Virus record (IMG/VR): IMGVR_UViG_3300046660_000488
Location: 124,001 to 188,000 of that record
Strand: one strand, 5' to 3'
Length of the DNA: 64,000 nucleotides
In this document: positions 7,934 to 58,761 of the stretch, piece by piece
Layout: every line of letters starts with the position of its first letter
Position numbering within the stretch: position 1 is the stretch's first letter
Translations under genes and position numbers: made by a program
Notes under the pieces: generated by a model
Seen by the model: the letters and a program-made list of their open reading frames with translations, nothing else
The model's database searches: none
Told to the model about the DNA's origin: nothing

Positions 7934-7963
7934 TTGACGGGATGCTCCTGTCAAACGTATAAA
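7934..7963 (+). promoter_or_regulatory. Sigma70 promoter for the tRNA region, with a TAAATA late promoter just upstream at 7924-7929
   Basis: TTGACG-N18-TATAAA. Confidence 0.7.
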
Positions 7964-7970
7964 GACAATT

Positions 7971-8215
7971 ATGACCAACGCACCGAACCACTTCCGCACC
8001 CTGACGACCGGCTTTGCCGGTTGCGGCGACGTGCGCGGTATCGGCGGCGGTCGCGGGGAACGAGAACGTTCCGCCGGGCCGCTCGGTCGTACTGGGGATA
8101 CTGTGGGACGCTAAGCGTCCCCGAAACTCTCCCTCCCGTTACGAACGCGAGAATGCCCGGCGACCAGAAAGTATCTTTCTGGCGGTGAGGCTGTATTTCC
8201 AAAGACAATCTGTAG
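7971..8215 (+). ncRNA. Structured leader or candidate ncRNA ahead of the tRNA cluster, containing a possible 47-aa leaderless ORF (7971-8114)
   Basis: Hairpins at 8007-8021, 8057-8072, 8105-8121 and 8164-8182, plus long-range pairing 8073-8079/8155-8161. Confidence 0.4.
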
Positions 8216-8216
8216 C

Positions 8217-8292
8217 GCGGGTGTAGCTCAATGGCTAGAGCGCTACCTTGCCGAGGTAGAGGTTGTGGGTTCGAGTCCCATCACCCGCTCCA
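8217..8292 (+). tRNA. tRNA-Gly(GCC)
   Basis: Acceptor GCGGGTG/CACCCGC, anticodon loop TTGCCGA, TTCGAG T-loop, U73, encoded CCA. Confidence 0.95.
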
Positions 8293-8325
8293 GATGTCTT
8301 AGGAACCAGTCTCCGCTACTTCCAC

Positions 8326-8400
8326 GGAGCATTCCTCTATCGGCTAAGAGACCCGGTTTTCACCCGGACAAGAGGGGTTCGATTCCCCTATGCTCTACCA
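8326..8400 (+). tRNA. tRNA-Glu(TTC)
   Basis: Acceptor GGAGCAT/ATGCTCT, loop TTTTCAC, TTCGAT T-loop, encoded CCA. Confidence 0.9.
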
Positions 8401-8402
8401 AT

Positions 8403-8477
8403 GTCTCGTTCGTATATCGGTTAGTATGCTGGACTTTCACTCCAGAGGGACGGGTTCGACTCCCGTACGAGACACCA
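8403..8477 (+). tRNA. tRNA-Glu(TTC)
   Basis: Acceptor GTCTCGT/ACGAGAC, loop CTTTCAC, encoded CCA. Confidence 0.93.
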
Positions 8478-8497
8478 AATAAAGTAAAGAAAGGTAG

Positions 8498-8528
8498 TTG
8501 ACACAGATTTCGAAGTAGAGTTTAAGAG
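8498..8528 (+). promoter_or_regulatory. Internal sigma70-type promoter in the tRNA cluster
   Basis: TTGACA, then 17-19 nt, then TTTAAG/TAAGAG in an A-rich spacer. Confidence 0.45.
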
Positions 8529-8551
8529 TAACCGAAGTATTCGACTTGCAC

Positions 8552-8626
8552 GGACCATTAGTCTATGGGTTAAGACGTTGCGTTCTCAGCGCGAAGTAAC
8601 GGGTTCGAGTCCCGTATGGTCTGCCA
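8552..8626 (+). tRNA. tRNA-Glu(CTC)
   Basis: Acceptor GGACCAT/ATGGTCT, loop TTCTCAG, encoded CCA. Confidence 0.9.
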
Positions 8627-8663
8627 AGTCTTGTATTTCACAGTATAGATGTTTCGTTGTGTT

Positions 8664-8738
8664 GGTTCTGTAGCTCAGTGGGAGAGCGTCCGGTTGTCAG
8701 CCGGAAGGTCGCGGGTTCGAAACCCGTCAGGACCGCCA
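8664..8738 (+). tRNA. tRNA-Asp(GTC)
   Basis: Acceptor GGTTCTG/CAGGACC, loop TTGTCAG, G73, encoded CCA. Confidence 0.95.
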
Positions 8739-8753
8739 TCACCAAACATCTAT

Positions 8754-8828
8754 GCGGCTGTAGCTCAGGGGTAGAGTACTGCACTGTCGATGCAGTTGTC
8801 GCGGGTTCAAATCCCGTCAGTCGCGCCA
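8754..8828 (+). tRNA. tRNA-Asp(GTC)
   Basis: Acceptor GCGGCTG/CAGTCGC, loop CTGTCGA, G73, encoded CCA. Confidence 0.93.
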
Positions 8829-8833
8829 TTTCC

Positions 8834-8854
8834 GGACCTGCTAAATACAGGTTC
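8834..8854 (+). promoter_or_regulatory. TAAATA late promoter in the loop of a hairpin between tRNA-Asp and tRNA-Gly
   Basis: GGACCTG-c-TAAATA-CAGGTTC. Confidence 0.55.
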
Positions 8855-8857
8855 AAT

Positions 8858-8932
8858 GCGGGTATAGCACAGTGGTAGTGCGTCAGCTTGCCAAGCTGAA
8901 GGTCGTCGGTTCGAACCCGACTACCCGCTCCA
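8858..8932 (+). tRNA. tRNA-Gly(GCC)
   Basis: Acceptor GCGGGTA/TACCCGC, loop TTGCCAA, U73, encoded CCA. Confidence 0.95.
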
Positions 8933-8950
8933 GTTTTCGCACTTCAGTGC

Positions 8951-9024
8951 GCGGGTATAGCATAGTGGTAATGCAGCAGCCTTCCAAGCTGAGTAGCGGG
9001 GTTCGATTCCCCGTACCCGCTCCA
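8951..9024 (+). tRNA. tRNA-Gly(TCC)
   Basis: Acceptor GCGGGTA/TACCCGC, loop CTTCCAA, U73, encoded CCA. Confidence 0.95.
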
Positions 9025-9025
9025 A

Positions 9026-9439
9026 TCACCGGAGAGGCAACCCACGGGCCTTCCGCCCATTGCCTTTGTTTCTGGCGCCAAACGTCGGCAACTGGCTCGC
9101 GCAGTTCGGGCACACCAATCTGAAATTGACCGGCATGTTGTTGGCGACATTTCCGTCGATGTGGTCGAGGATCAACGAGAGCGGCTTCCCGCGCCATTCA
9201 CTGGTGTTGCATTCCCGGCATAGATAGCCGTCGCGCTCGATGACATATGTTTTGATGGTAGATCGTTCAACCAATTGCCCTTCGGCAAACATTCGACGGC
9301 TAAGGTTGCGTTTCGCCAATCCAGAACAAGCATTCGAACAGAATTTTCCAGTCGAACTTCCGGGATAATATTCAAACTCTTGTTCGCATTCAACGCACTG
9401 TGCTTTAAGCCAGTGCGTTTTTCTTGTTGGGTTGGCCAT
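9026..9439 (-). CDS. HNH endonuclease family protein
   Basis: CxxC pairs, LDHIDG..NN...N, CPNC. AT-richer than its neighbours. Confidence 0.85.
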   Translation of the reverse strand: MANPTRKTHWLKAQCVECEQEFEYYPGSSTGKFCSNACSGLAKRNLSRRMFAEGQLVERSTIKTYVIERDGYLCRECNTSEWRGKPLSLILDHIDGNVANNMPVNFRLVCPNCASQLPTFGARNKGNGRKARGLPLR

Positions 9440-13712: not shown

Positions 13713-13769
13713 TAAATATGGCTTTAAGCCATGAGCAATGGCTATAGTTAACTCATACTTTAGAGCCAT
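13713..13769 (+). promoter_or_regulatory. Late promoter followed by a leader with alternative hairpins
   Basis: TAAATA at 13713-13718; ATGGCT at 13718 and 13738; AGCCAT at 13727 and 13764. Confidence 0.6.
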
Positions 13770-13773
13770 TTTC

Positions 13774-14298
13774 ATGCGAGCCATTGAGATTTTCGAGCGT
13801 AGTAGCGCCACCAAAGGCGACTTCAAGACGCTGTATTGCAGCCGCAAGCTGCTGAACGGCAAAGAGATCGTCGAGTGGGCGAAGAGCCAAGGGCTCCCCA
13901 AGTGCTTGGACCCGGATAACATGCACGTCACCGTTGCTTACTCCAAGGAGAAAATCGACTGGTCTGAAATGACCGACAGTTTCGACAACGTCCGCAGCGA
14001 CGGCGGCAAACGCGAAATGGCGCTGTTCGGCCAGAACAAGGACGCGGTGGTCCTGAAATTCGAGTGCCCCGATCTGGACAGCCGCTGGCAGGAATTCAAG
14101 GACGATTTCGGCGCCTCGTGGGATTTCGACGGCTACAATCCCCACGTGACGATCTCCTATGACGGCCTGCCCAAGGGCATCGACATTGACGACATCGAGC
14201 CGTTCGAAGGCGTGCTGGAATTCGGTCCCGAGAAAATGGACATCGTCGATCTGAAGTGGCGCGGCAAGGTCAAGGAAACCAAGCTCGACACCGAATAA
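13774..14298 (+). CDS. acb1: 2H phosphodiesterase, T4 gp57B/Acb1-like anti-CBASS nuclease homolog
   Basis: Two HxT motifs (MHVTVAYS, PHVTISY). GASWDFDGYNPHVTISY resembles the recalled T4 57B segment GATHDFDDYTPHITLSY. Confidence 0.75.
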   Translation: MRAIEIFERSSATKGDFKTLYCSRKLLNGKEIVEWAKSQGLPKCLDPDNMHVTVAYSKEKIDWSEMTDSFDNVRSDGGKREMALFGQNKDAVVLKFECPDLDSRWQEFKDDFGASWDFDGYNPHVTISYDGLPKGIDIDDIEPFEGVLEFGPEKMDIVDLKWRGKVKETKLDTE

Positions 14299-16069: not shown

Positions 16070-18019
16070 ATGTCATTGTCACTATTCGATACTTTCAAGG
16101 AAAAGTACGCCAAGTCGAAGGTCGAGGTCATGCCGTTGGGCGACTACCTCGAACTCTGCAAGACTGAGCCGATGGCGTATGCCACCGCGCCCGAGCGTAT
16201 GATCGCCGCAATTGGCGAACCCCAACTGGTGGACACCGCGAGCGATCCGCGCCTGTCCCGCGTGTTCCTGAACCGCACCGTCAAGGTCTACCCGGCCTTC
16301 AAGGATTTCTACGGCACGGAAGCTGTCGTGGAACGGATCGTCTCGTACTTCCGGCAAGCGGCCCAAGGGCTGGAAGAGCGCAAGCAGGTTCTGTACCTTC
16401 TCGGCCCGGTCGGCGGCGGCAAGTCGTCCATCGCCGAGCGTCTGAAGCAACTGATGGAAGCCAACCCCATCTACGTGCTGGCTGTCGATGGTCCGGACGG
16501 CAAGCCGGAACTCAGCCCGGTGTTCGAGACCCCACTGGGCCTCTTCCCGGCCGAGCACTACGCCTCGACGATGGCCGAGCAATACGGCATCAACAAGCGC
16601 TACCTGAACACCATCATGAGCCCGTGGGCGTCCAAGCGCTTGCGTGAATTCGAAGGCGACATCACCCAGTTCAAGGTGGCCAAGGTCTGGCCGTCGCGTC
16701 TGGAACAAATCGCCATCTGCAAGACCGAACCCGGCGACGAGAACAACCAAGACATTTCCTGCCTCGTGGGCAAGACCGACATCCGCAAGCTGGAGTTCTT
16801 CAGCCAGAACGATCCGGACGCCTACGCCTTCTCCGGCGCTCTGAACCGGGGCAACCAAGGCATCATGGAATTCGTCGAAATGTTCAAGGCGCCGATCAAG
16901 GTGCTGCACCCGCTGCTGACGGCCACGCAAGAAGGCAACTACGTCGGCACGGAAGCGATCTCGGCGATCCCGTTCAACGGCACGATCCTCGCGCACTCCA
17001 ACGAGAGTGAGTGGCAGTCGTTCCGCAACAACAAGAACAACGAAGCCTTCCTCGACCGCATCTGCGTGATCAAGGTCCCCTACTGCCTGCGCGACACCGA
17101 AGAGAGCAACATCTACCAGAAGATGCTCAACGGCTCGACGCTGTCGGAAGCCCCGCTGGCTCCGGAAACCCTCTCGCTGCTGTCGCGCTTCAGCGTGCTC
17201 AGCCGCCTGAAGGACCACCCCAACTCGACCCTGTGGTCGAAGATGCGGGTCTATGACGGCGCCAACATGAAGGAGACCGATCCGCGCTCCAAGTCGGTGC
17301 AGGAATACCGCGACGACGCTGGCGTGGACGAAGGCATGAACGGTATCTCGACTCGCTTCGCGTTCAAGATTCTGTCGAACGCCTTCAACTACGACACCGA
17401 AGAAATCGGCGCCGACCCGGTCCTGCTGATGATGGTGCTGGAGGAAGCGATCCGCCGTGAACAATTCCCGGCCGAGATCGAGAAGAAATACCTCGGGTTC
17501 CTGAAGGACGATCTGGTTCGCTCCTACGCCGAATTCGTCGGTAGTGAAATCCAGACGGCCTACCTCGAAGCCTACGACGAGTACGGTCAGAACCTGTTCG
17601 ACCGCTACATCGAGTACGCCGACCACTGGCTGCAAGAGATCGACTACAAGGACCCCGACACCGGCAACCTGTTCAACCGTGCGGTCCTGAACAACGAACT
17701 CGAAAAGATCGAGAAGGCGGCGGGAATCGGCAACCCGAAGGACTTCCGCCACGAGACGGTCAATTTCGTCCTGCGTCAGCGGGCTCGTGGCAACTCGGTG
17801 ACGTGGACCAGCTACGAGAAACTGAAGCGGGTCATCGAGAAGAAGATGTTCTCGTCGGTCGAAGAGCTTCTTCCGGTCATCAGCTTCGGCTCGAAGCAGG
17901 ACAAGGACACGGAACGCAAGCACAAGGACTTCGTCGAGCGGATGGAGAAGAAGGGCTACACGGCCCGCCAGACCCGCCGCATCGTCGAGTGGTACATGCG
18001 GACCCGCAAGTCGGGCTAA
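16070..18019 (+). CDS. prkA: PrkA/YeaG family AAA+ ATPase / serine kinase
   Basis: Walker A GPVGGGKS; EPGDENNQDIS; EFVEMFKAPIKVLHPLLTATQEG; full length. Confidence 0.97.
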   Translation: MSLSLFDTFKEKYAKSKVEVMPLGDYLELCKTEPMAYATAPERMIAAIGEPQLVDTASDPRLSRVFLNRTVKVYPAFKDFYGTEAVVERIVSYFRQAAQGLEERKQVLYLLGPVGGGKSSIAERLKQLMEANPIYVLAVDGPDGKPELSPVFETPLGLFPAEHYASTMAEQYGINKRYLNTIMSPWASKRLREFEGDITQFKVAKVWPSRLEQIAICKTEPGDENNQDISCLVGKTDIRKLEFFSQNDPDAYAFSGALNRGNQGIMEFVEMFKAPIKVLHPLLTATQEGNYVGTEAISAIPFNGTILAHSNESEWQSFRNNKNNEAFLDRICVIKVPYCLRDTEESNIYQKMLNGSTLSEAPLAPETLSLLSRFSVLSRLKDHPNSTLWSKMRVYDGANMKETDPRSKSVQEYRDDAGVDEGMNGISTRFAFKILSNAFNYDTEEIGADPVLLMMVLEEAIRREQFPAEIEKKYLGFLKDDLVRSYAEFVGSEIQTAYLEAYDEYGQNLFDRYIEYADHWLQEIDYKDPDTGNLFNRAVLNNELEKIEKAAGIGNPKDFRHETVNFVLRQRARGNSVTWTSYEKLKRVIEKKMFSSVEELLPVISFGSKQDKDTERKHKDFVERMEKKGYTARQTRRIVEWYMRTRKSG

Positions 18020-18097
18020 GCACTGACGGAGAGGCGTCTATTTTGGCGCCTCTCCACCACCGCCACGATTGCTTTAGTACCATTTCTGAGTAGGCAT

Positions 18098-19432
18098 ATG
18101 ACTGGCTGCATCATTATCGACCGTCGCAAGAACCCCAAGGACAAGAGTCTGTCCAACCGCCAGCGGTTTTTCGAGCGGGCCAAGAAGGCTGTGCGCGAAG
18201 CCGCCAAGCGGACTCTGGCTGGCCGTTCGCTGTCGGACACGGGTGATGCGATCATCAATATCCCGACCGAAGGCTTGGGCGAGCCCCATTTCCATCACGA
18301 CAACAACGTCGGCGAATACGACATCGTCCTGCCCGGCAATCGGCAGTTCATCGTCGGCGACAAGATCAAGAAGCAACAGGACGGCGAAGGCGGCGGCCGT
18401 GGTAGCGGCGGCAATGGCGAAGGCGGTGAGGACGATTTCCAATTCGCCCTGACGCACGAAGAATTCCTCGACGTCATTTTCGACGATCTCGAACTGCCGG
18501 ACCTGATCAAGAAGACCGAACGCAACGCCGTGGCGTTCGCGCCCAAGCGCGCGGGTCACACCAACGTCGGCATGCCCTCCAACCTGAACGTCGAGAAGAC
18601 GGCTATCGCAGGCATCGCCCGACGCTTGGCTCTGCGGGCGCCCAAGAAGCGCCAAATCCGCGAGCTTGAGGACGAATATCGCGAAGTTCTGGCCAAGTTC
18701 CACGACGCTCAGGACTCCGGCCTCATCTACGCCCTGACCACGCGACTGAACGAGATCATCACCGAAGTCGTGGCGCTGGAACGCAAGATGGCGGCGGTCG
18801 GCTTCCTCGACGACGTGGACCTTCGCTACAACAACTTCGTCCAGCAGCCCAAGCCGATCACTCAGGCCGTGATGTTCTGCATCATGGACGTGTCGTTCTC
18901 GATGGGCGAGCGCGAGAAGATCATCGCCAAGAAATTCTTCATCCTGATGAACCTCTTCCTGAAGCGTCGGTACGAGAACATCGACGTGGTCTTCGTTCGC
19001 CACCACAGCGAAGCCATCGAATGCGACGAGGAAACGTTCTTCACGAGCCGTGAAGGCGGCGGAACGGTCGTGTCGTCCGGCTATCGCAAGATGATCGACA
19101 TCATGAAGGATCGCTACGCCTCGGATGACTGGAACATCTACATGGCCCAAGCATCGGATGGCGACAACTACGATGGCGACAACGGCGAGGTCACCCGCTA
19201 CCTGAGCGAGGAAATCCTGCCGGTGATCCAACACTTCACCTACATCGAAATCGTCGATGAGTGGCGTAAGCAATTCTTCGGCGACCCGTCCGGCGGCTAC
19301 AGGTCCAACCTGTGGCAAACCATCGACGCGATTGCCAGCCAGTTCGAAAACGTCTCGGCCGCCATGCTCGAAGACGAAAGCGAAGTGATCCGCGTGTTCC
19401 GCAACCTCTTCAAGTCAGAGAAATCCCAGTGA
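18098..19432 (+). CDS. yeaH: YeaH/YhbH family vWA-domain protein
   Basis: IIDRR.N...KS..NRQRF, VLPGN, MIDAS-like MDVSFSM, GGT, ASDGDN. Confidence 0.95.
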   Translation: MTGCIIIDRRKNPKDKSLSNRQRFFERAKKAVREAAKRTLAGRSLSDTGDAIINIPTEGLGEPHFHHDNNVGEYDIVLPGNRQFIVGDKIKKQQDGEGGGRGSGGNGEGGEDDFQFALTHEEFLDVIFDDLELPDLIKKTERNAVAFAPKRAGHTNVGMPSNLNVEKTAIAGIARRLALRAPKKRQIRELEDEYREVLAKFHDAQDSGLIYALTTRLNEIITEVVALERKMAAVGFLDDVDLRYNNFVQQPKPITQAVMFCIMDVSFSMGEREKIIAKKFFILMNLFLKRRYENIDVVFVRHHSEAIECDEETFFTSREGGGTVVSSGYRKMIDIMKDRYASDDWNIYMAQASDGDNYDGDNGEVTRYLSEEILPVIQHFTYIEIVDEWRKQFFGDPSGGYRSNLWQTIDAIASQFENVSAAMLEDESEVIRVFRNLFKSEKSQ

Positions 19433-20898
19433 CCACGCTTCCCCTCTGGACAGATTCTGAATGGTCGTTCGAGCGCATCCGTCGCGTCTATGACGAGTGC
19501 GAAAAGATCGGCATCGGTGAGCTTGGTCTGGACATCTACCAGAACCAGTTCGAGATCATTTCGTCCGAGCAGATGATCGACCGCTACACCAGCGTCGGCA
19601 TGCCGCTCTACTATAACCATTGGTCGTTCGGTAAGCAGTTCTCGCGCGAGTGGGACAGCTACAAGGCTGGCAAGTCGGGTCTCGCGTACGAGTTGGTCAT
19701 CAACAGCAACCCCTGCATCAATTACTTGATGGAGGACAACACGATGACGACCCAAGCTCTCGTCATCGCGCACGCTGCTTTCGGCCACAACCATTTCTTC
19801 AAGAACAACTACATGTTCAAGACGTGGACTGACGCCGACGCCATCGTCGATTACCTCGTGTTTGCCCGCGATTACGTGGCCGAGTGCGAAGATCGTCACG
19901 GCCGCCAAGCGGTAGAAACTTTCCTCGACAGTTGCCATGCTCTGCAAGAGTACGGCGTGAACCGCTACGTGCGGCCGTCCAAGCTGTCCCTGAAGGATGA
20001 GCGCAAGAAAGCCGCCGAGCGCGAGGCGTACCTGCAAACGCGGGTGGACGAACTGTACCGGATCATCCCCGACAAAACGGCCACCAAGGAGAAGGAAAAG
20101 TTCCCGAAGCAGCCGGAAGAGAACCTTCTGTATTTCTTCGAGAAGAATTCACCGAAGCTGGAGCCGTGGCAACGTGAGTTGATCCGCATCGTTCGCAAGA
20201 CTTCGCAGTATTTCTACCCGCAAGGTCAGACGAAAATCGCCAACGAAGGCTTCGCGACGTGGACACACTACACGATCATGAACCGTCTGCACGACAAGGG
20301 CCTGACGACTGACGGCGCGCACCTCGAATTCCTGAAGCTGCATGCTGGCGTCATCTTCCAGCCGGACTATGACGACAAGTATTTCTCTCTGCCGCTGAAC
20401 CCCTACAAGCTGGGTTTCGAAATCCTGCGGGACATCGAACGCATCTGCAAGGAGCCCACGGACGAGGATCGCCACTGGTTCCCCGACATCGTCGGCGAAG
20501 ACCCGGTCGAGGTGATCAAGGACGCCGTCGCCAATTACCGCGACGAAAGCCTGATCCGCCAGTTCCTGTCACCCAAGGTGATCCGCGATTTCCGGTTCTT
20601 CCAACTGAAGGACAACCGGGAATCTGACCACTATCTGGTCGAGACGATCCAGAACGAAAAGGGCGTGCTGGATATTCGCGACAAGCTGGCCCAGCAATCC
20701 GAACGCGACACGCGCCTGCCGAACATCGAGATCGAGGAATGCGATCTGGAGAACCGACGCCTGTACCTTCGCTACTCGCCCAACGGCACGAAGGAATTGA
20801 GCGACGCCACCGAAATGATGCGGCACGTCCGCCGCCTGTGGGGCTACAGCGTCTACCTCCGCGACACCAAGGGCAAGCTTCTGGGACTGGTTCAATGA
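19429..20898 (+). CDS. ycgB: SpoVR/YcgB family protein
   Basis: GMPLYYNHWSFGK, AYELVINSNPC, HAAFGHNHFFKNN, NEGFATWTH; GTG start overlapping the yeaH stop. Confidence 0.95.
   Translation: MTTLPLWTDSEWSFERIRRVYDECEKIGIGELGLDIYQNQFEIISSEQMIDRYTSVGMPLYYNHWSFGKQFSREWDSYKAGKSGLAYELVINSNPCINYLMEDNTMTTQALVIAHAAFGHNHFFKNNYMFKTWTDADAIVDYLVFARDYVAECEDRHGRQAVETFLDSCHALQEYGVNRYVRPSKLSLKDERKKAAEREAYLQTRVDELYRIIPDKTATKEKEKFPKQPEENLLYFFEKNSPKLEPWQRELIRIVRKTSQYFYPQGQTKIANEGFATWTHYTIMNRLHDKGLTTDGAHLEFLKLHAGVIFQPDYDDKYFSLPLNPYKLGFEILRDIERICKEPTDEDRHWFPDIVGEDPVEVIKDAVANYRDESLIRQFLSPKVIRDFRFFQLKDNRESDHYLVETIQNEKGVLDIRDKLAQQSERDTRLPNIEIEECDLENRRLYLRYSPNGTKELSDATEMMRHVRRLWGYSVYLRDTKGKLLGLVQ

Positions 20899-22603: not shown

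Positions 22604-22607
<4 letters not shown>
22179..22607 (+). CDS. Hypothetical coiled-coil protein
   Basis: Ala/Lys-rich helical sequence; coupled. Confidence 0.6.
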
Positions 22608-23955
<1,348 letters not shown>

Positions 23956-23971
<16 letters not shown>

Positions 23972-39962: not shown

Positions 39963-41822
39963 ATGACCAAGCTCTCGTCGAAATATCGCTCTGTCACCTG
40001 CGGAGCCCTGACCAGCGCAAATGTGTCCGAGACACACACGCTGTCGGGCTGGGTGCACAACGTGCGAGATCACGGCGGTCTGGCCTTCATCGACCTGCGC
40101 GACAATTACGGTATCACGCAACTGGTGCTGAACCCGACCGAATTCCCCGAGATCGCCCACATCCGCAAGGAAAGCGTCATCCGGGTTATCGGTGAGGTCG
40201 TTCCGCGTCTGGCTGGCACGACGAACGCCAAGCTCTCCACCGGCGGGATCGAACTGAAGGTCGCGCACGCCATGGTGCTGTCGGAAGCCGTTGAGCTTCC
40301 CGTGCCCGTTTTCGGCGAGCCTGACTACCCCGAAGAGCTTCGCCTGAAGCATCGCTATCTCGACCTTCGCCGCGAAGGGCTGCACAAGCGCATCCAGCTT
40401 CGCTCGGACGTGGTCAACTTCCTGCGCGAGCGGATGCTGGGCGAAGGCTTCAAGGAATTCCACACGCCCATCCTGACGGCGTCGTCGCCGGAAGGTGCGC
40501 GCGATTTCCTCGTGCCCGCCCGCCTGCACCCCGGAAAATTCTACGCCCTGCCGCAAGCCCCTCAGCAATTCAAGCAATTGCTGATGGTCGCCGGGTTCGA
40601 CCGATATTTCCAGATCGCGCCGTGTTTCCGCGACGAAGCTGGCCGGGCCGACCGGTCGCCGGGCGAATTCTACCAACTCGACATCGAAATGAGCTTCGTC
40701 GATCAGGAAGACATCTTCCGGATGATCGAGCCGATCCTGTTCGACACGTTCGCCAAATTCCGACCGCAGCGAGACGTCTCGCCCGACAGCGGCTTCCTGC
40801 CCGGCACGGTTGCGGACAAGCTCAACATTTCGTCCTACCCGTTCAAGCGCATCCCCTATCGGGAGAGCATCCAGAAATACGGCACGGACAAGCCCGACCT
40901 GCGGAACCCGCTGGAAATGCAGGACGTGTCGAACGTGTTCAAGGGCGGCGGCTTCGGCATCTTCGCCTCAATCCTCGACGCCGATCCCGACAACCGCATC
41001 TGGGCGCTCCCCGCCTATGGCGGCGGCGCCAACTCGTTCACGCGAGGCATGGACTCGTGGGCCAAGGAACAGGGCCTGCCGGGCATGGCCTACATCGCGT
41101 GGAAACCCGAAAGCACCGACAACGATCTCGAAATCTCCTTCACCACCGCCACCGGCCCCGTCGCCAAGGCGCTAGGTAACGACGGCGCGGACAGGCTGCG
41201 CGACCGGTTCATGATGGCCGGAGGCGACGCCCTGTTTTTCTTCGCTGGCAAGCCGGACGATTTCTACAAGATCGCGGGCGCGGCGCGCACGAAGCTGGGC
41301 GAAGACCTCGGGCTGATCGACAAGAACCGGTTCGAATTCTGCTGGATCGTGGACTTCCCCATGTACGAGTTGAACGACGAGGGGAAGATCGACTTCAGCC
41401 ACAACCCGTTCTCGATGCCGCAAGGCGAAATGGATGCGCTGATCGGCCAAGACCCGCTCGACATCCTCGCCTACCAATACGACATCGTCGTCAACGGCAT
41501 CGAACTGTGCTCGGGCGGCATCCGGAACCACAAGCCGGAGATCATGCTGAAGGCCTTCGAGATCGCGGGCTACGGCCCGGAAGTCGTCGAAGAGAAATTC
41601 GGCGGGATGTTCAACGCCTTCAAGTACGGCGCTCCGCCGCACGGTGGCCTCGCACCCGGCATCGACCGCATGGTCATGCTGCTGGCTGGCGTGGACACCA
41701 TCCGCGACGTCATCGCTTTCCCGCTCAACCAGCAGGGCCAAGACCTGATGATGGGCGCGCCGTCCGAGATCACCGACAAGCAATGGAAAGAGTCCGGTAT
41801 CCGCCCGGCGCTGAAGGTCTGA
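39963..41822 (+). CDS. aspS: Aspartyl-tRNA synthetase, probably non-discriminating Asp/Asn type
   Basis: [34 protein letters not shown], motif 2 FRDE, motif 3 [14 protein letters not shown]. Confidence 0.97.
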
Positions 41823-41993: not shown

Positions 41994-42365
41994 ATGCCGC
42001 ATCTTCGCACCCTGCACGTCGAATACTCCGAAGGCGTGGTCTTCGACGATCTGAAGACCCTGAACATGCTGCTCGAAGCCAACACGGACATCCGTGGCCT
42101 GTTCGACTTCATGCGAGACCCCGGCCCGGTGTTCCATGGCTTCCTGAAGGTCACGGACGGCGCGGTCACGATCACCTCGAACGAGGAAGGCATGTTCTCC
42201 GGCTATCGCAACTGGGCGAACGTCTGGGGGTGCTTCACCGAAGACGCGGCCGAGTTGATCGCCAAGCACATGACCGAAGGCCGTCTTGTCTTCCGCCGTC
42301 GCGACGAAGACCCCGGCGTGCCGGACAAGGTCTTCATCATCCAACCCGGAACCGTCAACCACTGA
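41994..42365 (+). CDS. Hypothetical protein
   Basis: Coding-like codon usage. Confidence 0.6.
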   Translation: MPHLRTLHVEYSEGVVFDDLKTLNMLLEANTDIRGLFDFMRDPGPVFHGFLKVTDGAVTITSNEEGMFSGYRNWANVWGCFTEDAAELIAKHMTEGRLVFRRRDEDPGVPDKVFIIQPGTVNH

Positions 42366-42374
42366 GGCGCCACC

Positions 42375-42566
42375 ATGGCCAACGACCTGAGCTTCGAAGA
42401 CTGGTGCGCTGAACTCGACCGGATCGCGAAGGCGGATGGCATCGAGAAGAGCTACACCGAACAATGCGGCGCTGAGAGCTTCCGTGACAGCTTCGACGGC
42501 GGCATGACCCCGCAGGAAGCGTGGGATGAGGAAATCTACGCGGCCCAAGCCTGCGGCTGTTTCTGA
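42375..42566 (+). CDS. Hypothetical protein
   Basis: GAGG SD; GMTPQEAWDEE. Confidence 0.6.
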   Translation: MANDLSFEDWCAELDRIAKADGIEKSYTEQCGAESFRDSFDGGMTPQEAWDEEIYAAQACGCF

Positions 42567-50901: not shown

Positions 50902-52425
50902 ACGCAGCTAACGAAGACCTTCGACCATCGCTCCGAAGAGTCTTCCATCTATAACACATGGGAACAGGAAGGAGCTTTCGCGCCACGCGGAAATGGTCCT
51001 GCCTACTTCCTTCCGATGCCACCGCCGAACATCACCGGCATCCTGCACATGGGTCACGCCCTCTTCGCGACATTGCAGGACATTTCGACCCGATACCACC
51101 GGATGGCAGGCGATTGCACGCTCTGGCTCCCCGGCACGGATCACGCGGGTCTGGCGACGAACACCAAGATCACGGCGCTTATGCTGGAAGACGGGCTGAA
51201 CCCCGACGATCCGGAAGAATTCGACCTGTTCGCCGACATCTACAAGAAGAGCCTCCGCAACACGATCAGCGGCCAACTCCGTTCCTGCGGCGCCAGCGCC
51301 GACTGGAGCCGTGAGACGTTCACGCTGGACGAAGGGTACTCCCGCGCCGTTCTGACGGCCATGGAGCGCTGTGAGGCCGCTGGAATGCTCTATGGGCAGG
51401 ATGGGCAGTGGTGGCTCAACATGAAGCCTCTGGCTGACCGTCTGCTGGCCGAACTCGATGAAGGAAACATCGAGATCATCCCGGCCGGGCAGGAAGGCAC
51501 GCTCCGCAACTTCATCGAGAAAATCGAGCCGTGGTGCATCAGCCGCCAGATCAGGTGGGGCCACAAGCTCCCGATCTGGATCAGGGGCAATGCGCGCATG
51601 ATCTCGGCGGAATCGCCGGGCGGCGGCTGGAAGCAGGAAGACGGTTGCCTCGACACGTGGTTCTCGTCGGCCCTCTGGCCGTTCGCCACGCTGGGCTGGC
51701 CGGACGACACCGAGGACATGCGTCGGTTCTATCCGGCCGCGATGATCGAGACGGCTGACGACATCCTGTTCTTCTGGTGTGCTCGCATGCTGATGATGGG
51801 CCTTCTGCTCACCGATCAATTGCCGTTCAAGACGATCTTCCTGCACGGGCTGATCCGCGACAAGCACGGCAAGAAGATGAGCAAATCGGAAGGCAATGGC
51901 ATCGACCCGCTGGAGATCATCGACCGCTACGGCTGCGACAGCATGCGCTTTGCGCTGGCTGAATCCGCCACGCCCGGTCAGGACATGCGGATGTGGGACG
52001 ACAAATTCCAAGCCGGAAAGGCCCTGCGGACGAAGCTGTGGAACGCGGCGCGCTATGCGCTGAGCCACTACGACCGCATGGGACGGCCAGAGATCGAAGC
52101 TCTGGCCAACCTCAACCGCATGGACGACTTCCATTTCGTCAAGCGGACGCAGGAAGCCTCTGAGACCATCCAGATGGCCTACCGCGACCTTCGATACCAT
52201 GAGGCTGCACACGAGCTTCGTCGATACATTTTCGACGATCTGTGCGGCACGTTCATCGAAGCCACGAAGAGCCGTCTCTACGACGACAACGATCCGAAGG
52301 CCCTCAACACCTTGATGTGGGCTCTGGACATGACTTGCCGGATGGCTCACCCGATCATGCCGTTCGTCACCGAACGCATCCGGGCGACGTTCTCCGACAA
52401 GCCTTTGATTACTGACACTTTCTAA
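50902..52425 (+). CDS. valS: Minimal valyl-tRNA synthetase lacking the editing domain; start codon non-canonical or frameshifted
   Basis: KTFD..E..IY..WE..G.F, PPPNITG.LHMGHA, PGTDHAGLAT, WCISRQ..WGH, DTWFSSALWP, KMSKS.GN. Confidence 0.9.
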   Translation, partial: TQLTKTFDHRSEESSIYNTWEQEGAFAPRGNGPAYFLPMPPPNITGILHMGHALFATLQDISTRYHRMAGDCTLWLPGTDHAGLATNTKITALMLEDGLNPDDPEEFDLFADIYKKSLRNTISGQLRSCGASADWSRETFTLDEGYSRAVLTAMERCEAAGMLYGQDGQWWLNMKPLADRLLAELDEGNIEIIPAGQEGTLRNFIEKIEPWCISRQIRWGHKLPIWIRGNARMISAESPGGGWKQEDGCLDTWFSSALWPFATLGWPDDTEDMRRFYPAAMIETADDILFFWCARMLMMGLLLTDQLPFKTIFLHGLIRDKHGKKMSKSEGNGIDPLEIIDRYGCDSMRFALAESATPGQDMRMWDDKFQAGKALRTKLWNAARYALSHYDRMGRPEIEALANLNRMDDFHFVKRTQEASETIQMAYRDLRYHEAAHELRRYIFDDLCGTFIEATKSRLYDDNDPKALNTLMWALDMTCRMAHPIMPFVTERIRATFSDKPLITDTF

Positions 52426-57300: not shown

Positions 57301-58761
57301 ATGACCAAAACCGTCGTCACACGCTTCGCCCCGTCGCCGACCGGCTACCTCCACATCGGAGGGGCACGCACGGCACTGTTCAACTACCTCTATGCCAAGC
57401 ATATGGGTGGCCAATTCGTGCTTCGGATCGAAGACACGGATCGCGAACGCTCGACGCCGGAATCCGTGCAGGCGATCTTCGACGGCCTGAAATGGCTGGG
57501 CATCCCGCACGACGGCGACGTCGTCTTCCAATCGGCGCGCGAGGCTCGCCACGTTGAGGCGGTGCAATACCTGCTCGACAAGGGCCGGGCCTATCGCTGC
57601 TACCTGACCAAGGACGAGCTTGAGGCCATGCGGGTCAAGGGCAAGGCCTTCCGCTCGCCGCACCGCGATGAGCCGGGCTGGGAGCCGCCGACCGATGACC
57701 GTCCGTTCGTTGTTCGTTTCAAGGGGCCGACCATCGGCCGCACGAACATCAACGACATGGTCAAGGGGAGCGAGGCCGCTGGCGTCTGGTTCGACAACTC
57801 GACGTTCGATGACCTGATCCTGCTGCGTTCAGACGGATCGCCGACCTACAACCTCGCGGTGGTGGTCGATGACCACGACATGGGTGTCACCCACGTGATC
57901 CGGGGCGACGACCATCTGAACAACGCTGGCCGTCAGACTCTGCTGTACGAAGCACTGGACTGGGAAATCCCGGTCTTCGGCCACGTGCCGCTGATCCTGA
58001 ACCCGGAAGGCAAGCCGCTGTCCAAGCGCAACGGCGACGCCGCCGTCTCCGACTATGCGGCTCTCGGCTACCTGCCGGAGGGCATGCGTAACTACCTCAC
58101 CCGTCTGGGCTGGGGTCACGGTGACGACGAAATCTTCTCGGACGCTCAGGCCATCGAGTGGTTCGACGTCGCCGATGTGGTGACTTCGCCCGCCCGCTTC
58201 GACTTCAAGAAGCTGGACGCAGTGAACCAACACTACATCAACGCGATGGATGACGTCACCCTGTCCAACATGGTGATCGACATCCTGAATTCGCGTCGCG
58301 ACGAGCCGTTGAACACCACCGCCGCCCATGCCGTGATGCGCGTTGTGCCCCTCATCAAGATGGGCACGCCGACCGTGGTGGCTCTGGCCAACGCGGCGGA
58401 TTTCGCGACGGTCCTCGACCAACCCCTGACCGACAAGGTCGCGGCGATGTTGGAGGACGACGTGGTCAAGCATCGCCTGTCGGTGCTGACCTCGGAGATC
58501 ATGCTGGCGCCGTGGAACGTTGATTCTCTGAACGAAGCCATCCGTGGCTACGTTCACGTCAACGATCTGAAGATGAAGGATGTCGGCCCGCTGCTGCGCG
58601 GTGTGCTGACCGGCCTTGATCGGGCACCGGACCTTGGCATCTGCCTTGTGGCCATCGGCCGTGAGCGTTCGCTGGCCCGTCTCAACGACGTGGTCAACCG
58701 CCTCACGTTCCCGCCGGTCAACAAGATGGATTCGCATCCAGCGGTTGACGGCCAAAACTAA
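57301..58761 (+). CDS. gltX: Glutamyl-tRNA synthetase
   Basis: VVTRFAPSPTGYLHIGGARTAL, LRIEDTD, PTYNLAVVVDD, VIRGDDH, LSKR; leaderless promoter TTGATT-N17-TAGGTT-N6-ATG. Confidence 0.97.
   Translation: MTKTVVTRFAPSPTGYLHIGGARTALFNYLYAKHMGGQFVLRIEDTDRERSTPESVQAIFDGLKWLGIPHDGDVVFQSAREARHVEAVQYLLDKGRAYRCYLTKDELEAMRVKGKAFRSPHRDEPGWEPPTDDRPFVVRFKGPTIGRTNINDMVKGSEAAGVWFDNSTFDDLILLRSDGSPTYNLAVVVDDHDMGVTHVIRGDDHLNNAGRQTLLYEALDWEIPVFGHVPLILNPEGKPLSKRNGDAAVSDYAALGYLPEGMRNYLTRLGWGHGDDEIFSDAQAIEWFDVADVVTSPARFDFKKLDAVNQHYINAMDDVTLSNMVIDILNSRRDEPLNTTAAHAVMRVVPLIKMGTPTVVALANAADFATVLDQPLTDKVAAMLEDDVVKHRLSVLTSEIMLAPWNVDSLNEAIRGYVHVNDLKMKDVGPLLRGVLTGLDRAPDLGICLVAIGRERSLARLNDVVNRLTFPPVNKMDSHPAVDGQN

What the first reader, a model, noticed from the sequence alone, without database searches (positions are those of the whole stretch)
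8217..9024. tRNA array limited to Gly, Glu and Asp, with same-anticodon pairs differing in the anticodon loop
Seen: eight tRNAs, all reading G-starting codons. Three anticodons are duplicated with divergent bodies and loop flanks: Gly GCC TTGCCGA/TTGCCAA, Glu TTC TTTTCAC/CTTTCAC, Asp GTC TTGTCAG/CTGTCGA. Cognate AspRS and GluRS are encoded in the same window. Inference: loop-variant redundancy resists host anticodon nucleases, and phage synthetases may form private tRNA/aaRS pairs.
Basis: partly seen in the sequence, partly recalled or inferred. Interest (0 to 1): 0.6.

Follow-up and report, generated by a model that had tools for sequence, protein, structure and literature searches.

The report
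Sorted tRNA block of a megaphage
The eight Gly/Glu/Asp tRNA genes are real, but they are one amino-acid-sorted block of a 578-kb rhizosphere phage that carries 69 tRNAs for all 20 amino acids, so the restriction and the duplicated anticodons are ordinary for this genome; the unusual part is that its tRNA-Asp anticodon loops are of a type seen in many phages but not in the bacteria sampled.

Summary
Context changes the meaning. The window belongs to a complete 578,292-bp phage with 69 tRNA genes (45 anticodons, all 20 amino acids) in arrays sorted by amino acid. Twenty anticodons are duplicated genome-wide. The duplicated anticodons GUC and GCC serve the two heaviest codon demands. Loop flanks differ no more than tRNA bodies. 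The 'private tRNA/aaRS pair' idea fails as a general explanation: there is no phage GlyRS, and the CUGUCGA tRNA-Asp variant occurs in phages without AspRS. The nuclease-evasion idea stays open. Both Asp tRNAs lack the C38 identity base. Their loops recur in more than 150 viral contigs and in none of 121 sampled Pseudomonadota. All five clade genomes carry a T4 Rnl1-type RNA ligase. Verdict: new member of a known kind (huge phages rich in translation genes), moderate interest.

The parts
7934..7963 (+). promoter-like element P1 (TTGACG-N18-TATAAA), 283 nt upstream of the first tRNA
   Evidence: Regex scan and sequence. GTTGAC-N16-19-TWNAWN motifs are enriched in non-coding DNA (17 of 29 hits against 16% non-coding) and precede several other tRNA arrays. 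The generic sigma-70 scan did not list it. Function is inferred.
7964..8216 (+). leader between P1 and the first tRNA; holds a 47-codon ORF (7971-8114) called in the JGI annotation and two short hairpins
   Evidence: No Rfam family matches here. Role unknown.
8217..8292 (+). tRNA-Gly(GCC), loop UUGCCGA (G37, non-canonical), U73, G1-C72, C2-G71, CCA encoded
   Evidence: (71.5 bits). The G37 loop differs from UUGCCAA in 4 of 4 reference Proteobacteria and is rare in viruses (11 IMG/VR contigs).
8326..8400 (+). tRNA-Glu(UUC), loop UUUUCAC, G1.U72 and G2-C71 acceptor, A73
   Evidence: (48 bits). The acceptor type is shared with the G004 Glu tRNAs and with Tranquillimonas tRNA-Glu.
8403..8477 (+). 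tRNA-Glu(UUC), loop CUUUCAC, G1-C72 and U2-A71 as in the widespread bacterial type, but A73
   Evidence: (59.3 bits).
8498..8526 (+). promoter-like element P2 (TTGACA-N17-TTTAAG) in the 74-nt spacer, 54 nt upstream of tRNA-Glu(CUC)
   Evidence: Function is inferred.
8552..8626 (+). tRNA-Glu(CUC), loop UUCUCAG, G1.U72 acceptor, G73
   Evidence: (54.4 bits). The same loop occurs in the G004 orthologue.
8664..8738 (+). tRNA-Asp(GUC), loop UUGUCAG (U32, G38; lacks C38), G73, G1-C72, G2-C71
   Evidence: (66.4 bits). The same loop occurs in G001 and G004 and in 32 IMG/VR contigs. Not found in 121 Pseudomonadota.
8754..8828 (+). tRNA-Asp(GUC), loop CUGUCGA (G37, A38; lacks C38), G73, G1-C72, C2-G71
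   Evidence: (67.5 bits). The same loop occurs in G002 and G003 and in at least 119 IMG/VR contigs. Not found in 121 Pseudomonadota.
8858..8932 (+). tRNA-Gly(GCC), canonical loop UUGCCAA, U73
   Evidence: (75.4 bits).
8951..9024 (+). tRNA-Gly(UCC), canonical loop CUUCCAA, U73; 82% identical to the preceding Gly-GCC with the same acceptor stem
   Evidence: Up to 91-92% identical to tRNA-Gly of some Pseudomonadota.
9026..9439 (-). HNH endonuclease gene abutting the array (2 nt after the last tRNA)
   Evidence: PHROGs HNH endonuclease families, E = 1.7e-21. A role in moving tRNA genes is inferred.
39963..41822 (+). bacterial-type aspartyl-tRNA synthetase, 31 kb from the array
   Evidence: Pfam PF00152 and PF01336; NCBIfam NF001750, 742 bits. 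One copy in each of five clade genomes.
57301..58761 (+). bacterial-type glutamyl-tRNA synthetase, 48 kb from the array
   Evidence: Pfam PF00749 and PF19269; TIGR00464 gltX_bact, 458 bits. Present in 4 of 5 clade genomes.
22604..23971 (+). cysteinyl-tRNA synthetase (not cognate to the array)
   Evidence: cysS, 441 bits.
51016..52425 (+). ValRS-like class I synthetase of 469 aa without the CP1 editing domain (not cognate to the array)
   Evidence: The valS models match in two pieces and score below their cut-offs. Conserved in G001-G004.

Best explanation
The locus is one of about ten tRNA gene arrays of a complete 578-kb tailed 'megaphage' from a rhizosphere metagenome. Its nearest cultured relatives are Sinorhizobium phage Phosso and Agrobacterium phage Atu_ph07. 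The phage carries a near-complete decoding set of its own: 69 tRNA genes, 45 anticodons, all 20 amino acids, two CUA suppressors, and at least 11 aminoacyl-tRNA synthetases. The arrays are sorted by amino acid. This block holds the genome's entire Gly, Glu and Asp set, and a relative (G004) keeps a five-gene version (Asp, Gly, Glu, Glu, Gly). The three extra same-anticodon copies mainly add supply. GUC and GCC serve the two most demanded codon sets of the phage, and GAA is also common. The copies are old or separately acquired (64-75% identical), so they differ in loops as much as everywhere else. An HNH endonuclease gene abutting the array may help such genes move between phages. The tRNAs would be transcribed from phage promoters (two promoter-like sites) and have CCA encoded. 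They would be charged by the phage AspRS and GluRS and/or host enzymes, and tRNA-Gly by the host GlyRS only. They would keep phage translation going when host tRNA pools are insufficient, depleted or attacked. A separate layer is superimposed. Both tRNA-Asp genes and one tRNA-Gly carry anticodon loops that are not the bacterial ones. The two Asp loop motifs are recurrent phage-type motifs kept on otherwise unrelated tRNA bodies, so the loop itself is under selection. The most plausible cause is escape from host enzymes that recognise the canonical loop (anticodon nucleases or modification enzymes), not pairing with a phage synthetase. Shown: gene content, sorting, duplication pattern, loop distribution in viruses versus sampled bacteria, aaRS census. 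Inferred: transcription units, who charges what, the supply function, nuclease escape.
For: Genome context: single 578,292-bp contig with direct terminal repeats, estimated 100% complete; T4 gp15-like tail protein 40% identical to Phosso and 38% to Atu_ph07; rhizosphere source. 69 tRNAs for all 20 amino acids, and all Gly/Glu/Asp genes lie in this array. Amino-acid sorting: 33 adjacent same-amino-acid pairs against 2.3 expected in G000, and also in G001 and G002. Related huge phages carry 57, 57 and (partial genomes) 52 and 24 tRNAs. G004 has an Asp-Gly-Glu-Glu-Gly block and G002 an Asp-Glu-Glu-Glu block. Supply: demand per anticodon is GUC 68.6 per 1000 (rank 1), GCC 61.8 (rank 2) and UUC 31.4. 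Copy number against demand gives Spearman 0.46, p = 0.002; multi-copy median 34.7 against single-copy 14.3, p = 0.001. This replicates in G001 (rho 0.38, p = 0.02). Loop flanks against bodies: 0.30 and 0.34 differences per site. Twenty anticodons are duplicated, 11 with different loops. Non-bacterial loops: Asp is CUGUCAC in 110 of 121 sampled Pseudomonadota, CUGUCAA in 5, and no G37 or G38 form was found. CUGUCGA occurs in at least 119 viral contigs and UUGUCAG in 32. Loop-masked body identity is 0.72 and 0.70 within loop types and 0.71 between them. C38 is one of five strong, conserved Asp determinants (PMC9976931). Not aaRS-dependent: 0 of 5 phages with CUGUCGA tRNA-Asp have an AspRS. No GlyRS in any of the five clade genomes. 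tRNA-attack pressure: a T4 Rnl1-family RNA ligase is present in 5 of 5 clade genomes and 0 of 14 control cells. HNH endonuclease next to the array.
Against: The copy-number/demand relation is absent in G002 (rho 0.01), and some high-demand anticodons (GGC-Ala 60.0, GGU-Thr 35.6) are single-copy. My gene calls are crude (84% coding). Pure dosage does not explain why copies are so divergent, or why particular non-canonical loops recur across phages. There are no expression data: no RNA run holds the stretch. The host is unknown, so no comparison with host tRNA or host nucleases was possible. PrkA homologues point only broadly to Pseudomonadota. The bacterial control sampled one phylum only. Promoter assignments rest on a motif I defined myself.
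Confidence: 0.6

Rival explanations
1. Reader's model, part 1. The same-anticodon pairs exist because loop variants make the set robust to host anticodon nucleases: whichever loop a host nuclease recognises, one copy survives.
For: Both Asp loops and Gly-GCC #18 differ from the loops of the reference Proteobacteria. The Asp loop motifs are virus-typical and conserved on unrelated bodies. All five clade genomes encode a T4 Rnl1-family RNA ligase, the enzyme family T4 uses to repair nuclease-cut tRNA, and G002 also has RtcB. The principle is shown experimentally for T5 tRNA-Lys against PARIS (PMC11464382) and proposed generally for anticodon-loop mutations (PMC10264068).
Against: Nine of 20 duplicated anticodons have identical loops, and loop flanks differ no more than bodies. 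In other phages the CUGUCGA tRNA-Asp is normally the only Asp tRNA (111 of 119 loci), so redundancy of variants is not needed for whatever the loop does. Duplicates track codon demand. The host and its nucleases are unknown, and I know of no anticodon nuclease specific for Gly or Glu tRNAs in bacteria (my knowledge, not tested).
Confidence: 0.3
2. Reader's model, part 2. The phage AspRS and GluRS form private (orthogonal) pairs with the variant tRNAs, which host synthetases charge poorly.
For: Both tRNA-Asp genes lack C38, a strong Asp determinant, and #23 also lacks G2-C71. Seven of eight tRNA-Asp genes in the clade lack C38, and every clade genome has an AspRS. Al-Shayeb et al. suggested that huge phages charge 'their own tRNA variants' (PMC7162821).
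Against: No GlyRS exists in the genome, yet Gly-GCC is duplicated with a variant loop. Duplicates also occur for Lys, Asn, Gln, Pro, Leu and Ala without a phage aaRS, while Ser and Arg have a phage aaRS but no same-anticodon duplicates. The CUGUCGA tRNA-Asp occurs in phages of 141-177 kb without any AspRS (0 of 5). AspRS and GluRS are ordinary bacterial-type enzymes by family score. They lie 31 and 48 kb from the array, and linkage is not conserved in relatives.
Confidence: 0.12
3. Neutral history. The second copies are leftovers of duplication and horizontal gain, possibly helped by the adjacent homing-type endonuclease. They have no distinct role, and loop differences are drift within what the ribosome and synthetases tolerate.
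For: Loop flanks diverge at the same rate as bodies. The neighbourhood is highly variable, with almost no synteny to relatives. An HNH endonuclease abuts the array. 15 of 55 other tRNA-rich viral loci also hold same-anticodon duplicates. The copy/demand relation is absent in G002.
Against: The same two Asp loop motifs recur in many viral contigs on bodies that are about 70% identical, which drift does not predict. Asp and Glu duplicates recur in four of five clade genomes. Copy number tracks demand in G000 and G001. All eight genes keep full cloverleaf scores.
Confidence: 0.2
4. Host-range model. The pairs provide tRNAs with two identity architectures so that synthetases of different hosts can charge at least one copy. 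For example, Glu-UUC #20 resembles the widespread GUCCCC type, and #19 resembles the G1.U72 type seen in Tranquillimonas.
For: Alignment A1 shows two bacterial tRNA-Glu architectures, with one phage copy resembling each in acceptor stem and loop. Relatives span 45-59% GC, suggesting different hosts.
Against: There are only five bacterial reference genomes. Neither phage copy is close to any bacterial tRNA-Glu: no Glu match is listed among the top hits of the 401-genome search, which scored only two candidates per genome. The phage has its own GluRS, which makes dependence on host GluRS less pressing. The model does not explain the Asp pair, where both copies are non-bacterial.
Confidence: 0.1

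Closest known systems
Huge phages with expanded translation gene sets (Al-Shayeb et al. 2020, Nature 578:425; PMC7162821)
   Same: Genome over 500 kb from a metagenome, dozens of tRNAs distinct from cellular ones, many aaRS genes, and RNA ligase for cleaved tRNAs. That paper reports up to 67 tRNAs and up to 15 aaRS per genome and already proposes that phage aaRS charge phage tRNA variants.
   Different: 69 tRNA genes by ARAGORN, about the top of the range reported there. High GC (59%), standard code, rhizosphere origin, and nearest cultured relatives infect Rhizobiales. Whether this genome belongs to one of the named clades was not tested.
Phage tRNAs with anticodon-loop changes predicted to escape anticodon nucleases (van den Berg et al. 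2023, eLife 12:e85183; PMC10264068)
   Same: Phage tRNAs whose loops differ from the cellular loop for the same anticodon.
   Different: That work compares phage tRNAs with tRNAs of a known host with characterised nucleases. Here the host and its nucleases are unknown. The deviations are at positions 32, 37 and 38 of Asp and 37 of Gly, and they coexist with a second copy.
T5 tRNA-Lys versus PARIS (Burman et al. 2024, PMC11464382) and T5 tRNA-Tyr versus retron-Eco7 (Azam et al. 2024, PMC11555353)
   Same: tRNA genes in phage arrays that rescue translation when a defence system destroys host tRNA, either through a non-cleavable anticodon stem-loop variant or through oversupply from a strong promoter.
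   Different: Those are experimentally shown for Lys and Tyr in E. coli phages. Nothing comparable is known for Gly, Glu or Asp, and nothing was tested here.
Sinorhizobium phage Phosso (PV764938, 469 kb) and Agrobacterium phage Atu_ph07 (MF403008, 490 kb)
   Same: Closest cultured relatives by a tail protein (40% and 38% identity over the full length). Giant myoviruses of soil and plant-associated Alphaproteobacteria with tRNA genes.
   Different: Phosso's tRNAs in the region inspected are scattered singly among protein genes. No AspRS match was found in either. Dense amino-acid-sorted arrays and the aaRS set belong to the uncultured clade.

Membership tests
tRNA (Rfam RF00005) | Full cloverleaf match above the gathering score (29 bits) | tested here: met
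   All eight match model positions 1-71 at 48.0-75.4 bits. ARAGORN agrees.
Bacterial tRNA-Asp identity set (Giege & Eriani 2023) | G73 and anticodon G34 U35 C36 | tested here: met
   Both genes have GTC and discriminator G.
Bacterial tRNA-Asp identity set (Giege & Eriani 2023) | C38 in the anticodon loop | tested here: not met
   G38 in 8664-8738 and A38 in 8754-8828. C38 is present in 110 of 121 sampled Pseudomonadota.
Bacterial tRNA-Asp identity set (Giege & Eriani 2023) | G1-C72 and G2-C71, strictly conserved in bacterial tRNA-Asp | tested here: inconclusive
   8664-8738 has both. 8754-8828 has G1-C72 but C2-G71 (read from the sequences).
Bacterial tRNA-Gly identity set | U73, G1-C72, C2-G71, C35 C36 | tested here: met
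   All three Gly genes start GCGGGT, end ..CCCGC-T-CCA and have NCC anticodons.
Widespread bacterial tRNA-Glu(UUC) type (GUCCCC.., CUUUCAC, G73) | G1-C72, U2-A71, loop CUUUCAC, discriminator G73 | tested here: inconclusive
   8403-8477 has the acceptor pairs and the loop but A73. 8326-8400 and 8552-8626 have G1.U72 and G2-C71 and other loops. T11, T13 and A24 are invariant in alignment A1.
Nuclease-insensitive phage tRNA (van den Berg 2023; T5 tRNA-Lys/PARIS) | Anticodon stem-loop differs from the host tRNA at the nuclease's recognition or cleavage site | tested here: inconclusive
   Loops differ from those of sampled Pseudomonadota for both Asp genes and one Gly gene, but the host and the nuclease are unknown.
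Nuclease-insensitive phage tRNA (van den Berg 2023; T5 tRNA-Lys/PARIS) | The tRNA resists cleavage and rescues infection | not testable with these tools
   Needs cleavage and plaque assays.
Private (orthogonal) phage aaRS/tRNA pair | A cognate phage aaRS exists for each variant tRNA | tested here: not met
   AspRS and GluRS are present. No GlyRS of either type: the PF00587 hits are ThrRS, SerRS and a HisRS fragment, and PF02091 has no hit.
Private (orthogonal) phage aaRS/tRNA pair | The variant tRNA occurs only together with the phage aaRS | tested here: not met
   0 of 5 phages carrying the CUGUCGA tRNA-Asp encode an AspRS; four of them are at least 97% complete.
Private (orthogonal) phage aaRS/tRNA pair | Host aaRS does not charge the variant; phage aaRS does | not testable with these tools
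   Needs aminoacylation kinetics.
Huge phage with expanded translation machinery (Al-Shayeb 2020) | Phage genome over 200 kb with phage structural genes, many tRNAs and several aaRS | tested here: met
   578,292 bp with terminal repeats; gp15-like tail protein; 69 tRNAs. Eleven aaRS-type genes (Arg, Cys, Asp, Glu, Thr, Ser, Ile, Met, Tyr, Trp, PheRS-alpha-like), plus a ValRS-like protein and a HisRS fragment.

The most novel reading that the evidence does not exclude
This megaphage clade may maintain, beside ordinary-looking tRNAs, a systematic 'disguised' second set. Its members keep the anticodon and discriminator needed for charging but differ from cellular tRNAs where host defence or modification enzymes look. 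Examples are tRNA-Asp without C38, tRNA-Gly with G37 and, elsewhere in the genome, Lys, Asn, Gln, Cys and Thr tRNAs built on long-variable-arm (class II-like) scaffolds, each next to a normal twin and conserved in all five relatives. The Gly/Glu/Asp pairs would be the mild end of that strategy.
Probability: 0.2. Interest if true: 0.75.

Novelty: new member of a known kind. Interest (0 to 1): 0.35.

Why it matters
As stated, the finding is ordinary for its genome. The work adds three things. (1) A concrete case in which a 'restricted' array is shown to be a sorted slice of a complete set. (2) Evidence that two non-canonical tRNA-Asp anticodon loops, both lacking the C38 identity base, are recurrent phage motifs. 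They were not found in 121 sampled Pseudomonadota and do not depend on a phage AspRS. This gives a sharp, testable question about what selects them. (3) A well-defined set of natural same-anticodon tRNA pairs, with cognate phage synthetases for two of three amino acids. These would be convenient material for testing how far tRNA identity and nuclease recognition can be separated.

Tried and rejected
- DNA similarity search of the array against 50,697 phage records gave only generic tRNA-level matches.
- The flanking AAA-ATPase protein found no relatives in IMG/VR. Relatives were reached through AspRS instead.
- Grouping by first codon base (the 'G-starting codons' idea): rejected. Different-amino-acid neighbours share the first base in 8 of 26 cases, and the Val and Ala tRNAs lie elsewhere.
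- The Asp loop types as two old paralogue lineages: rejected. Loop-masked bodies are no more alike within types than between them.
- TAG recoding despite two CUA tRNAs: no signal. TAG ends 97 of 675 called genes, and downstream frames are no more open or coding than after TGA or TAA. Only code 11 was used.
- Recent capture of the tRNAs from a host: not seen. The best identity in 401 Pseudomonadota is 91-92% for Gly-UCC and at most 86% for Gly-GCC, with no Asp or Glu match above 72% among the top-listed hits (that search scored only two candidates per genome).
- Host assignment through PrkA: not discriminating, at 63-67% identity to both Alpha- and Gammaproteobacteria.
- Conserved synteny around the array: only one weak flanking match to G004.
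- The first tRNA-Glu pattern had a wrong spacer and found nothing. It was corrected.
- Expression: no RNA run holds the stretch. Read laying was not used, because contigs of DNA runs cannot show expression.
Full report
**1. The observation**

ARAGORN finds eight tRNA genes in the 64-kb window, all on the + strand between 8217 and 9024. In order they are Gly(GCC), Glu(UUC), Glu(UUC), Glu(CUC), Asp(GUC), Asp(GUC), Gly(GCC) and Gly(UCC). Rfam's tRNA model matches all eight over its full length at 48-75 bits, against a gathering score of 29. No other RNA family is found in the window.

The partners are 75%, 64% and 75% identical overall. AspRS (39963-41822) and GluRS (57301-58761) are in the window. 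So are CysRS (22604-23971) and a 469-aa ValRS-like protein without the editing domain (51016-52425). A second assembly is identical across 14.5 kb including the array.

**2. What the window belongs to**

The window is bases 124,001-188,000 of a single 578,292-bp contig with 59% GC. The contig is a JGI metagenome record classed as a virus with direct terminal repeats and 100% estimated completeness. The one run that holds the stretch completely is a rhizosphere metagenome.

A T4 gp15-like tail protein in the window is 40% identical over its full length to Sinorhizobium phage Phosso (469 kb) and 38% to Agrobacterium phage Atu_ph07 (490 kb). AspRS led to four uncultured relatives in IMG/VR: 516,805 bp (G001, complete), 607,744 bp (G002, complete), 240 kb (G003) and 415 kb (G004).

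**3. The array in its genome**

The whole genome has 69 tRNA genes with 45 anticodons. They cover all 20 amino acids, plus two tRNAs with a CUA anticodon. The genes lie in about ten arrays sorted by amino acid:
- Thr x3
- Ser/Cys/Tyr/His
- Cys/Ala
- Gly/Glu/Asp
- Trp/Lys/Met/Leu/Arg
- a 24-gene block with Ile, Val, Gln, Met, Pro, Asn, Ala, Phe and Thr

Adjacent genes share the amino acid 33 times, against a permutation mean of 2.3 and a maximum of 8. The same holds in G001 and G002. The eight genes of the finding are all of the genome's Gly, Glu and Asp tRNAs.

Sorting by first codon base is not a rule. Among neighbours with different amino acids, 8 of 26 share the first base, and the Val and Ala tRNAs are elsewhere. 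That condition is met.

**4. Duplicated anticodons**

Twenty anticodons are present more than once in the genome. In 11 of them the loops differ, and the bodies are 55-83% identical. Across all same-anticodon pairs, positions 32, 37 and 38 differ at 0.30 per site and the rest of the molecule at 0.34 per site. G001 gives 0.33 and 0.38, and G002 gives 0.46 and 0.37. So the loop differences in the three focal pairs are what the overall divergence predicts. Three of three pairs differ here and 8 of 17 elsewhere, which is too few to call a difference.

Copy number follows the phage's own codon use. With my crude gene calls (675 genes, 84% coding), the demand served by GUC is 68.6 per 1000 codons (rank 1). 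GCC serves 61.8 (rank 2), UUC 31.4, CUC 28.7 and UCC 12.7. Copy number against demand gives Spearman 0.46 (p = 0.002). Multi-copy anticodons have a median demand of 34.7, against 14.3 for single-copy ones (p = 0.001). The relation replicates in G001 (rho 0.38, p = 0.02) but not in G002 (rho 0.01). Support for dosage is therefore moderate.

**5. Relatives**

The two complete relatives have 57 tRNA genes each, and the fetched parts of the two partial genomes hold 52 (G004) and 24 (G003).
- G004 has a block Asp-Gly(GCC)-Glu(UUC)-Glu(CUC)-Gly(UCC) with single copies.
- G002 has Asp-Glu(CUC)-Glu(UUC)-Glu(UUC).
- G001 has three Glu(UUC) genes and two Asp genes.
- G003 has two Asp genes.

The focal array therefore looks like the five-gene core seen in G004 plus three further genes: Gly-GCC with G37, the Glu-UUC of bacterial type, and the Asp with CUGUCGA. 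Synteny around the array is weak. Only the AAA-ATPase gene just upstream has a distant match, 4 kb upstream of the G004 block. An HNH endonuclease gene starts 2 nt after the last tRNA on the other strand. That is compatible with movement of tRNA genes between phages, but it was not tested.

**6. Are the loops unusual?**

In five reference Proteobacteria, the Asp loop is CUGUCAC (3 of 3 genomes in which it was captured). Gly-GCC is UUGCCAA (4 of 4) and Gly-UCC is CUUCCAA (5 of 5).

With a pattern anchored in the D-arm and T-arm, 110 of 121 sampled Pseudomonadota have a tRNA-Asp with C38, and every listed match reads CUGUCAC. Five have CUGUCAA. None has G37, or U32 with G38.

With UUGUCAG it matches 32. 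ARAGORN confirms tRNA-Asp in 114 and 25 of these loci. With the loop masked, bodies are no more alike within a loop type than between types (medians 0.72, 0.70 and 0.71). So the conserved or convergent feature is the loop motif itself.

C38 is one of five strong, evolutionarily conserved Asp identity determinants (Giege & Eriani 2023). Both Asp tRNAs here lack it, as do seven of the eight in the clade.

The Gly-GCC loop with G37 is rare even in viruses (11 contigs). The Glu loops are common among viral tRNAs. For Glu, four of five reference bacteria share one type (GUCCCC.., CUUUCAC, G73), and Tranquillimonas has another (GGCCCG.., UUUUCAA, G1.U72). Phage gene 8403-8477 resembles the first in acceptor and loop. 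Genes 8326-8400 and 8552-8626 resemble the second in acceptor.

Among 401 Pseudomonadota, the closest matches are to Gly-UCC (91-92% identity) and the two Gly-GCC genes (at most 86%). No Asp or Glu match above 72% appears among the top-listed hits, although that search scored only two candidates per genome. No recent capture from the bacteria sampled is visible.

**7. Private tRNA/aaRS pairs?**

Six-frame Pfam searches and NCBIfam scans give this set for the genome: ArgRS, CysRS, AspRS, GluRS, IleRS, MetRS, SerRS, TyrRS, TrpRS, a short ThrRS, a PheRS-alpha-like ORF, a ValRS-like protein and a 171-aa HisRS fragment. No GlyRS of either type was found, and no LysRS, AsnRS, GlnRS, ProRS, LeuRS or AlaRS.

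Same-anticodon duplicates exist for Gly, Lys, Asn, Gln, Pro, Leu and Ala without a phage enzyme. Ser and Arg have a phage enzyme but no same-anticodon duplicate.

AspRS is present in all five clade genomes and GluRS in four. However, five other phages (141-177 kb, four at least 97% complete) that carry the CUGUCGA tRNA-Asp have no AspRS at all. In such phages this tRNA is normally the only tRNA-Asp (111 of 119 loci).

The synthetase genes lie 31 and 48 kb from the array, and their distance to the cognate tRNAs varies widely in relatives. The private-pair idea is not excluded for Asp in this clade. It is not needed for the variant loop, and it cannot explain the Gly pair.

**8. Nuclease evasion?**

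This cannot be tested without the host. Circumstantial points in favour:
- The Asp loops are phage-typical and were not seen in the sampled bacteria (section 6).
- A T4 Rnl1-family RNA ligase is present in all five clade genomes and in none of 14 control cellular genomes. G002 also has RtcB.
- The principle is demonstrated experimentally for T5 tRNA-Lys against PARIS, and oversupply of tRNA-Tyr works against retron-Eco7.

Points against 'redundancy of variants' as the reason for the pairs:
- Nine of 20 duplicated anticodons have identical loops.
- The Asp variant works as a single copy in other phages.
- Copy number follows demand.

**9. Transcription**

A TTGAC-N17-19-TAnAAn motif lies 283 nt upstream of the first tRNA (7934-7963) and again in the 74-nt spacer before Glu(CUC) (8498-8526). 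Similar motifs precede other arrays, and the motif is enriched in non-coding DNA. The generic sigma-70 scan did not list them. Two transcription units are therefore an inference only. No RNA run holds the stretch.

**10. Verdict**

The locus is a sorted block of the tRNA complement of a huge phage. This is a known kind of system (Al-Shayeb et al. 2020 report up to 67 tRNAs and up to 15 aaRS). The second copies are best explained by supply for the most used codons, combined with old or horizontal origin.

The non-bacterial anticodon loops are a real, separate feature shared with many phages. This applies above all to the two tRNA-Asp loops without C38. Its cause is open. Escape from host enzymes that read the canonical loop is the most plausible reading, and pairing with a phage synthetase the less likely one. 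Novelty: new member of a known kind. Interest: 0.35.

Noticed in passing
outside the window: G000:C1 c508664-508748, c508998-509082, 516932-517019, 516221-516306, 104252-104338, 42360-42445: tRNAs with Lys-UUU, Lys-CUU, Asn-GUU, Gln-UUG, Cys-GCA and Thr-UGU anticodons are 85-88 nt long. They have 13-16-nt variable regions forming a short hairpin and class II-type D regions. Each except Thr-UGU sits beside a normal ~76-nt tRNA with the same anticodon. The same pattern is present in all four relatives, and Rfam scores 80-89-nt tRNA hits in relatives at 56-64 bits. A text search found no paper describing this.
   Followed up: partly
outside the window: G000:C1 c109999-110073 and c110080-110155: Two tRNA genes with a CUA (amber-reading) anticodon, also present in G001-G004. 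TAG still ends 97 of 675 called genes, and there is no read-through signal.
   Followed up: partly
window 9026-9439 (-): An HNH endonuclease gene starts 2 nt after the last tRNA of the array. It may be a homing element that moves neighbouring tRNA genes.
   Followed up: partly
outside the window: G000:C1 105645-106160: A 171-aa HisRS/HisZ-like fragment lies between the two tRNA-His genes. Counterparts sit at the equivalent place in G001 (352621-352986) and G004 (378802-379167).
   Followed up: partly
window 51016-52425 (+); outside the window G000:C1 193418-194725: The ValRS-like protein lacks the CP1 editing domain. The ThrRS (435 aa) matches only profile positions 169-554, so it lacks the N-terminal editing region. 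The ValRS-like form is conserved in all relatives.
   Followed up: partly
outside the window: G000:C1 c76600-77199: A T4 Rnl1-family RNA ligase (PF09511) is present in all five clade genomes and in none of the 14 control cellular genomes. RtcB is present only in G002.
   Followed up: partly
window 16070-20898 (+): A PrkA / DUF444 (YeaH) / SpoVR three-gene cluster is carried by the phage. PrkA is 63-67% identical to Alpha- and Gammaproteobacteria. No counterpart was found in G001 or G002.
   Followed up: partly
window 13738-14298 (+): A 186-aa protein matches Pfam Acb1 (anti-CBASS 2H phosphoesterase) in the precomputed annotation and PHROG 'RNA ligase'. It could be counter-defence or RNA repair.
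   Followed up: no
whole genome G000: 64 of 69 tRNA genes encode the 3' CCA, whereas 93 of 114 CUGUCGA-type tRNA-Asp genes in other viral contigs do not.
   Followed up: no
outside the window: G000:C1 520441-521112: A PheRS-alpha-like ORF directly follows the last gene of the largest tRNA array. Counterparts exist in G001 and G004.
   Followed up: no
outside the window: G000:C1 c457430-457499: ARAGORN reports a 70-nt tRNA-like gene with a two-base 'anticodon'. It may be a pseudogene or a false call.
   Followed up: no
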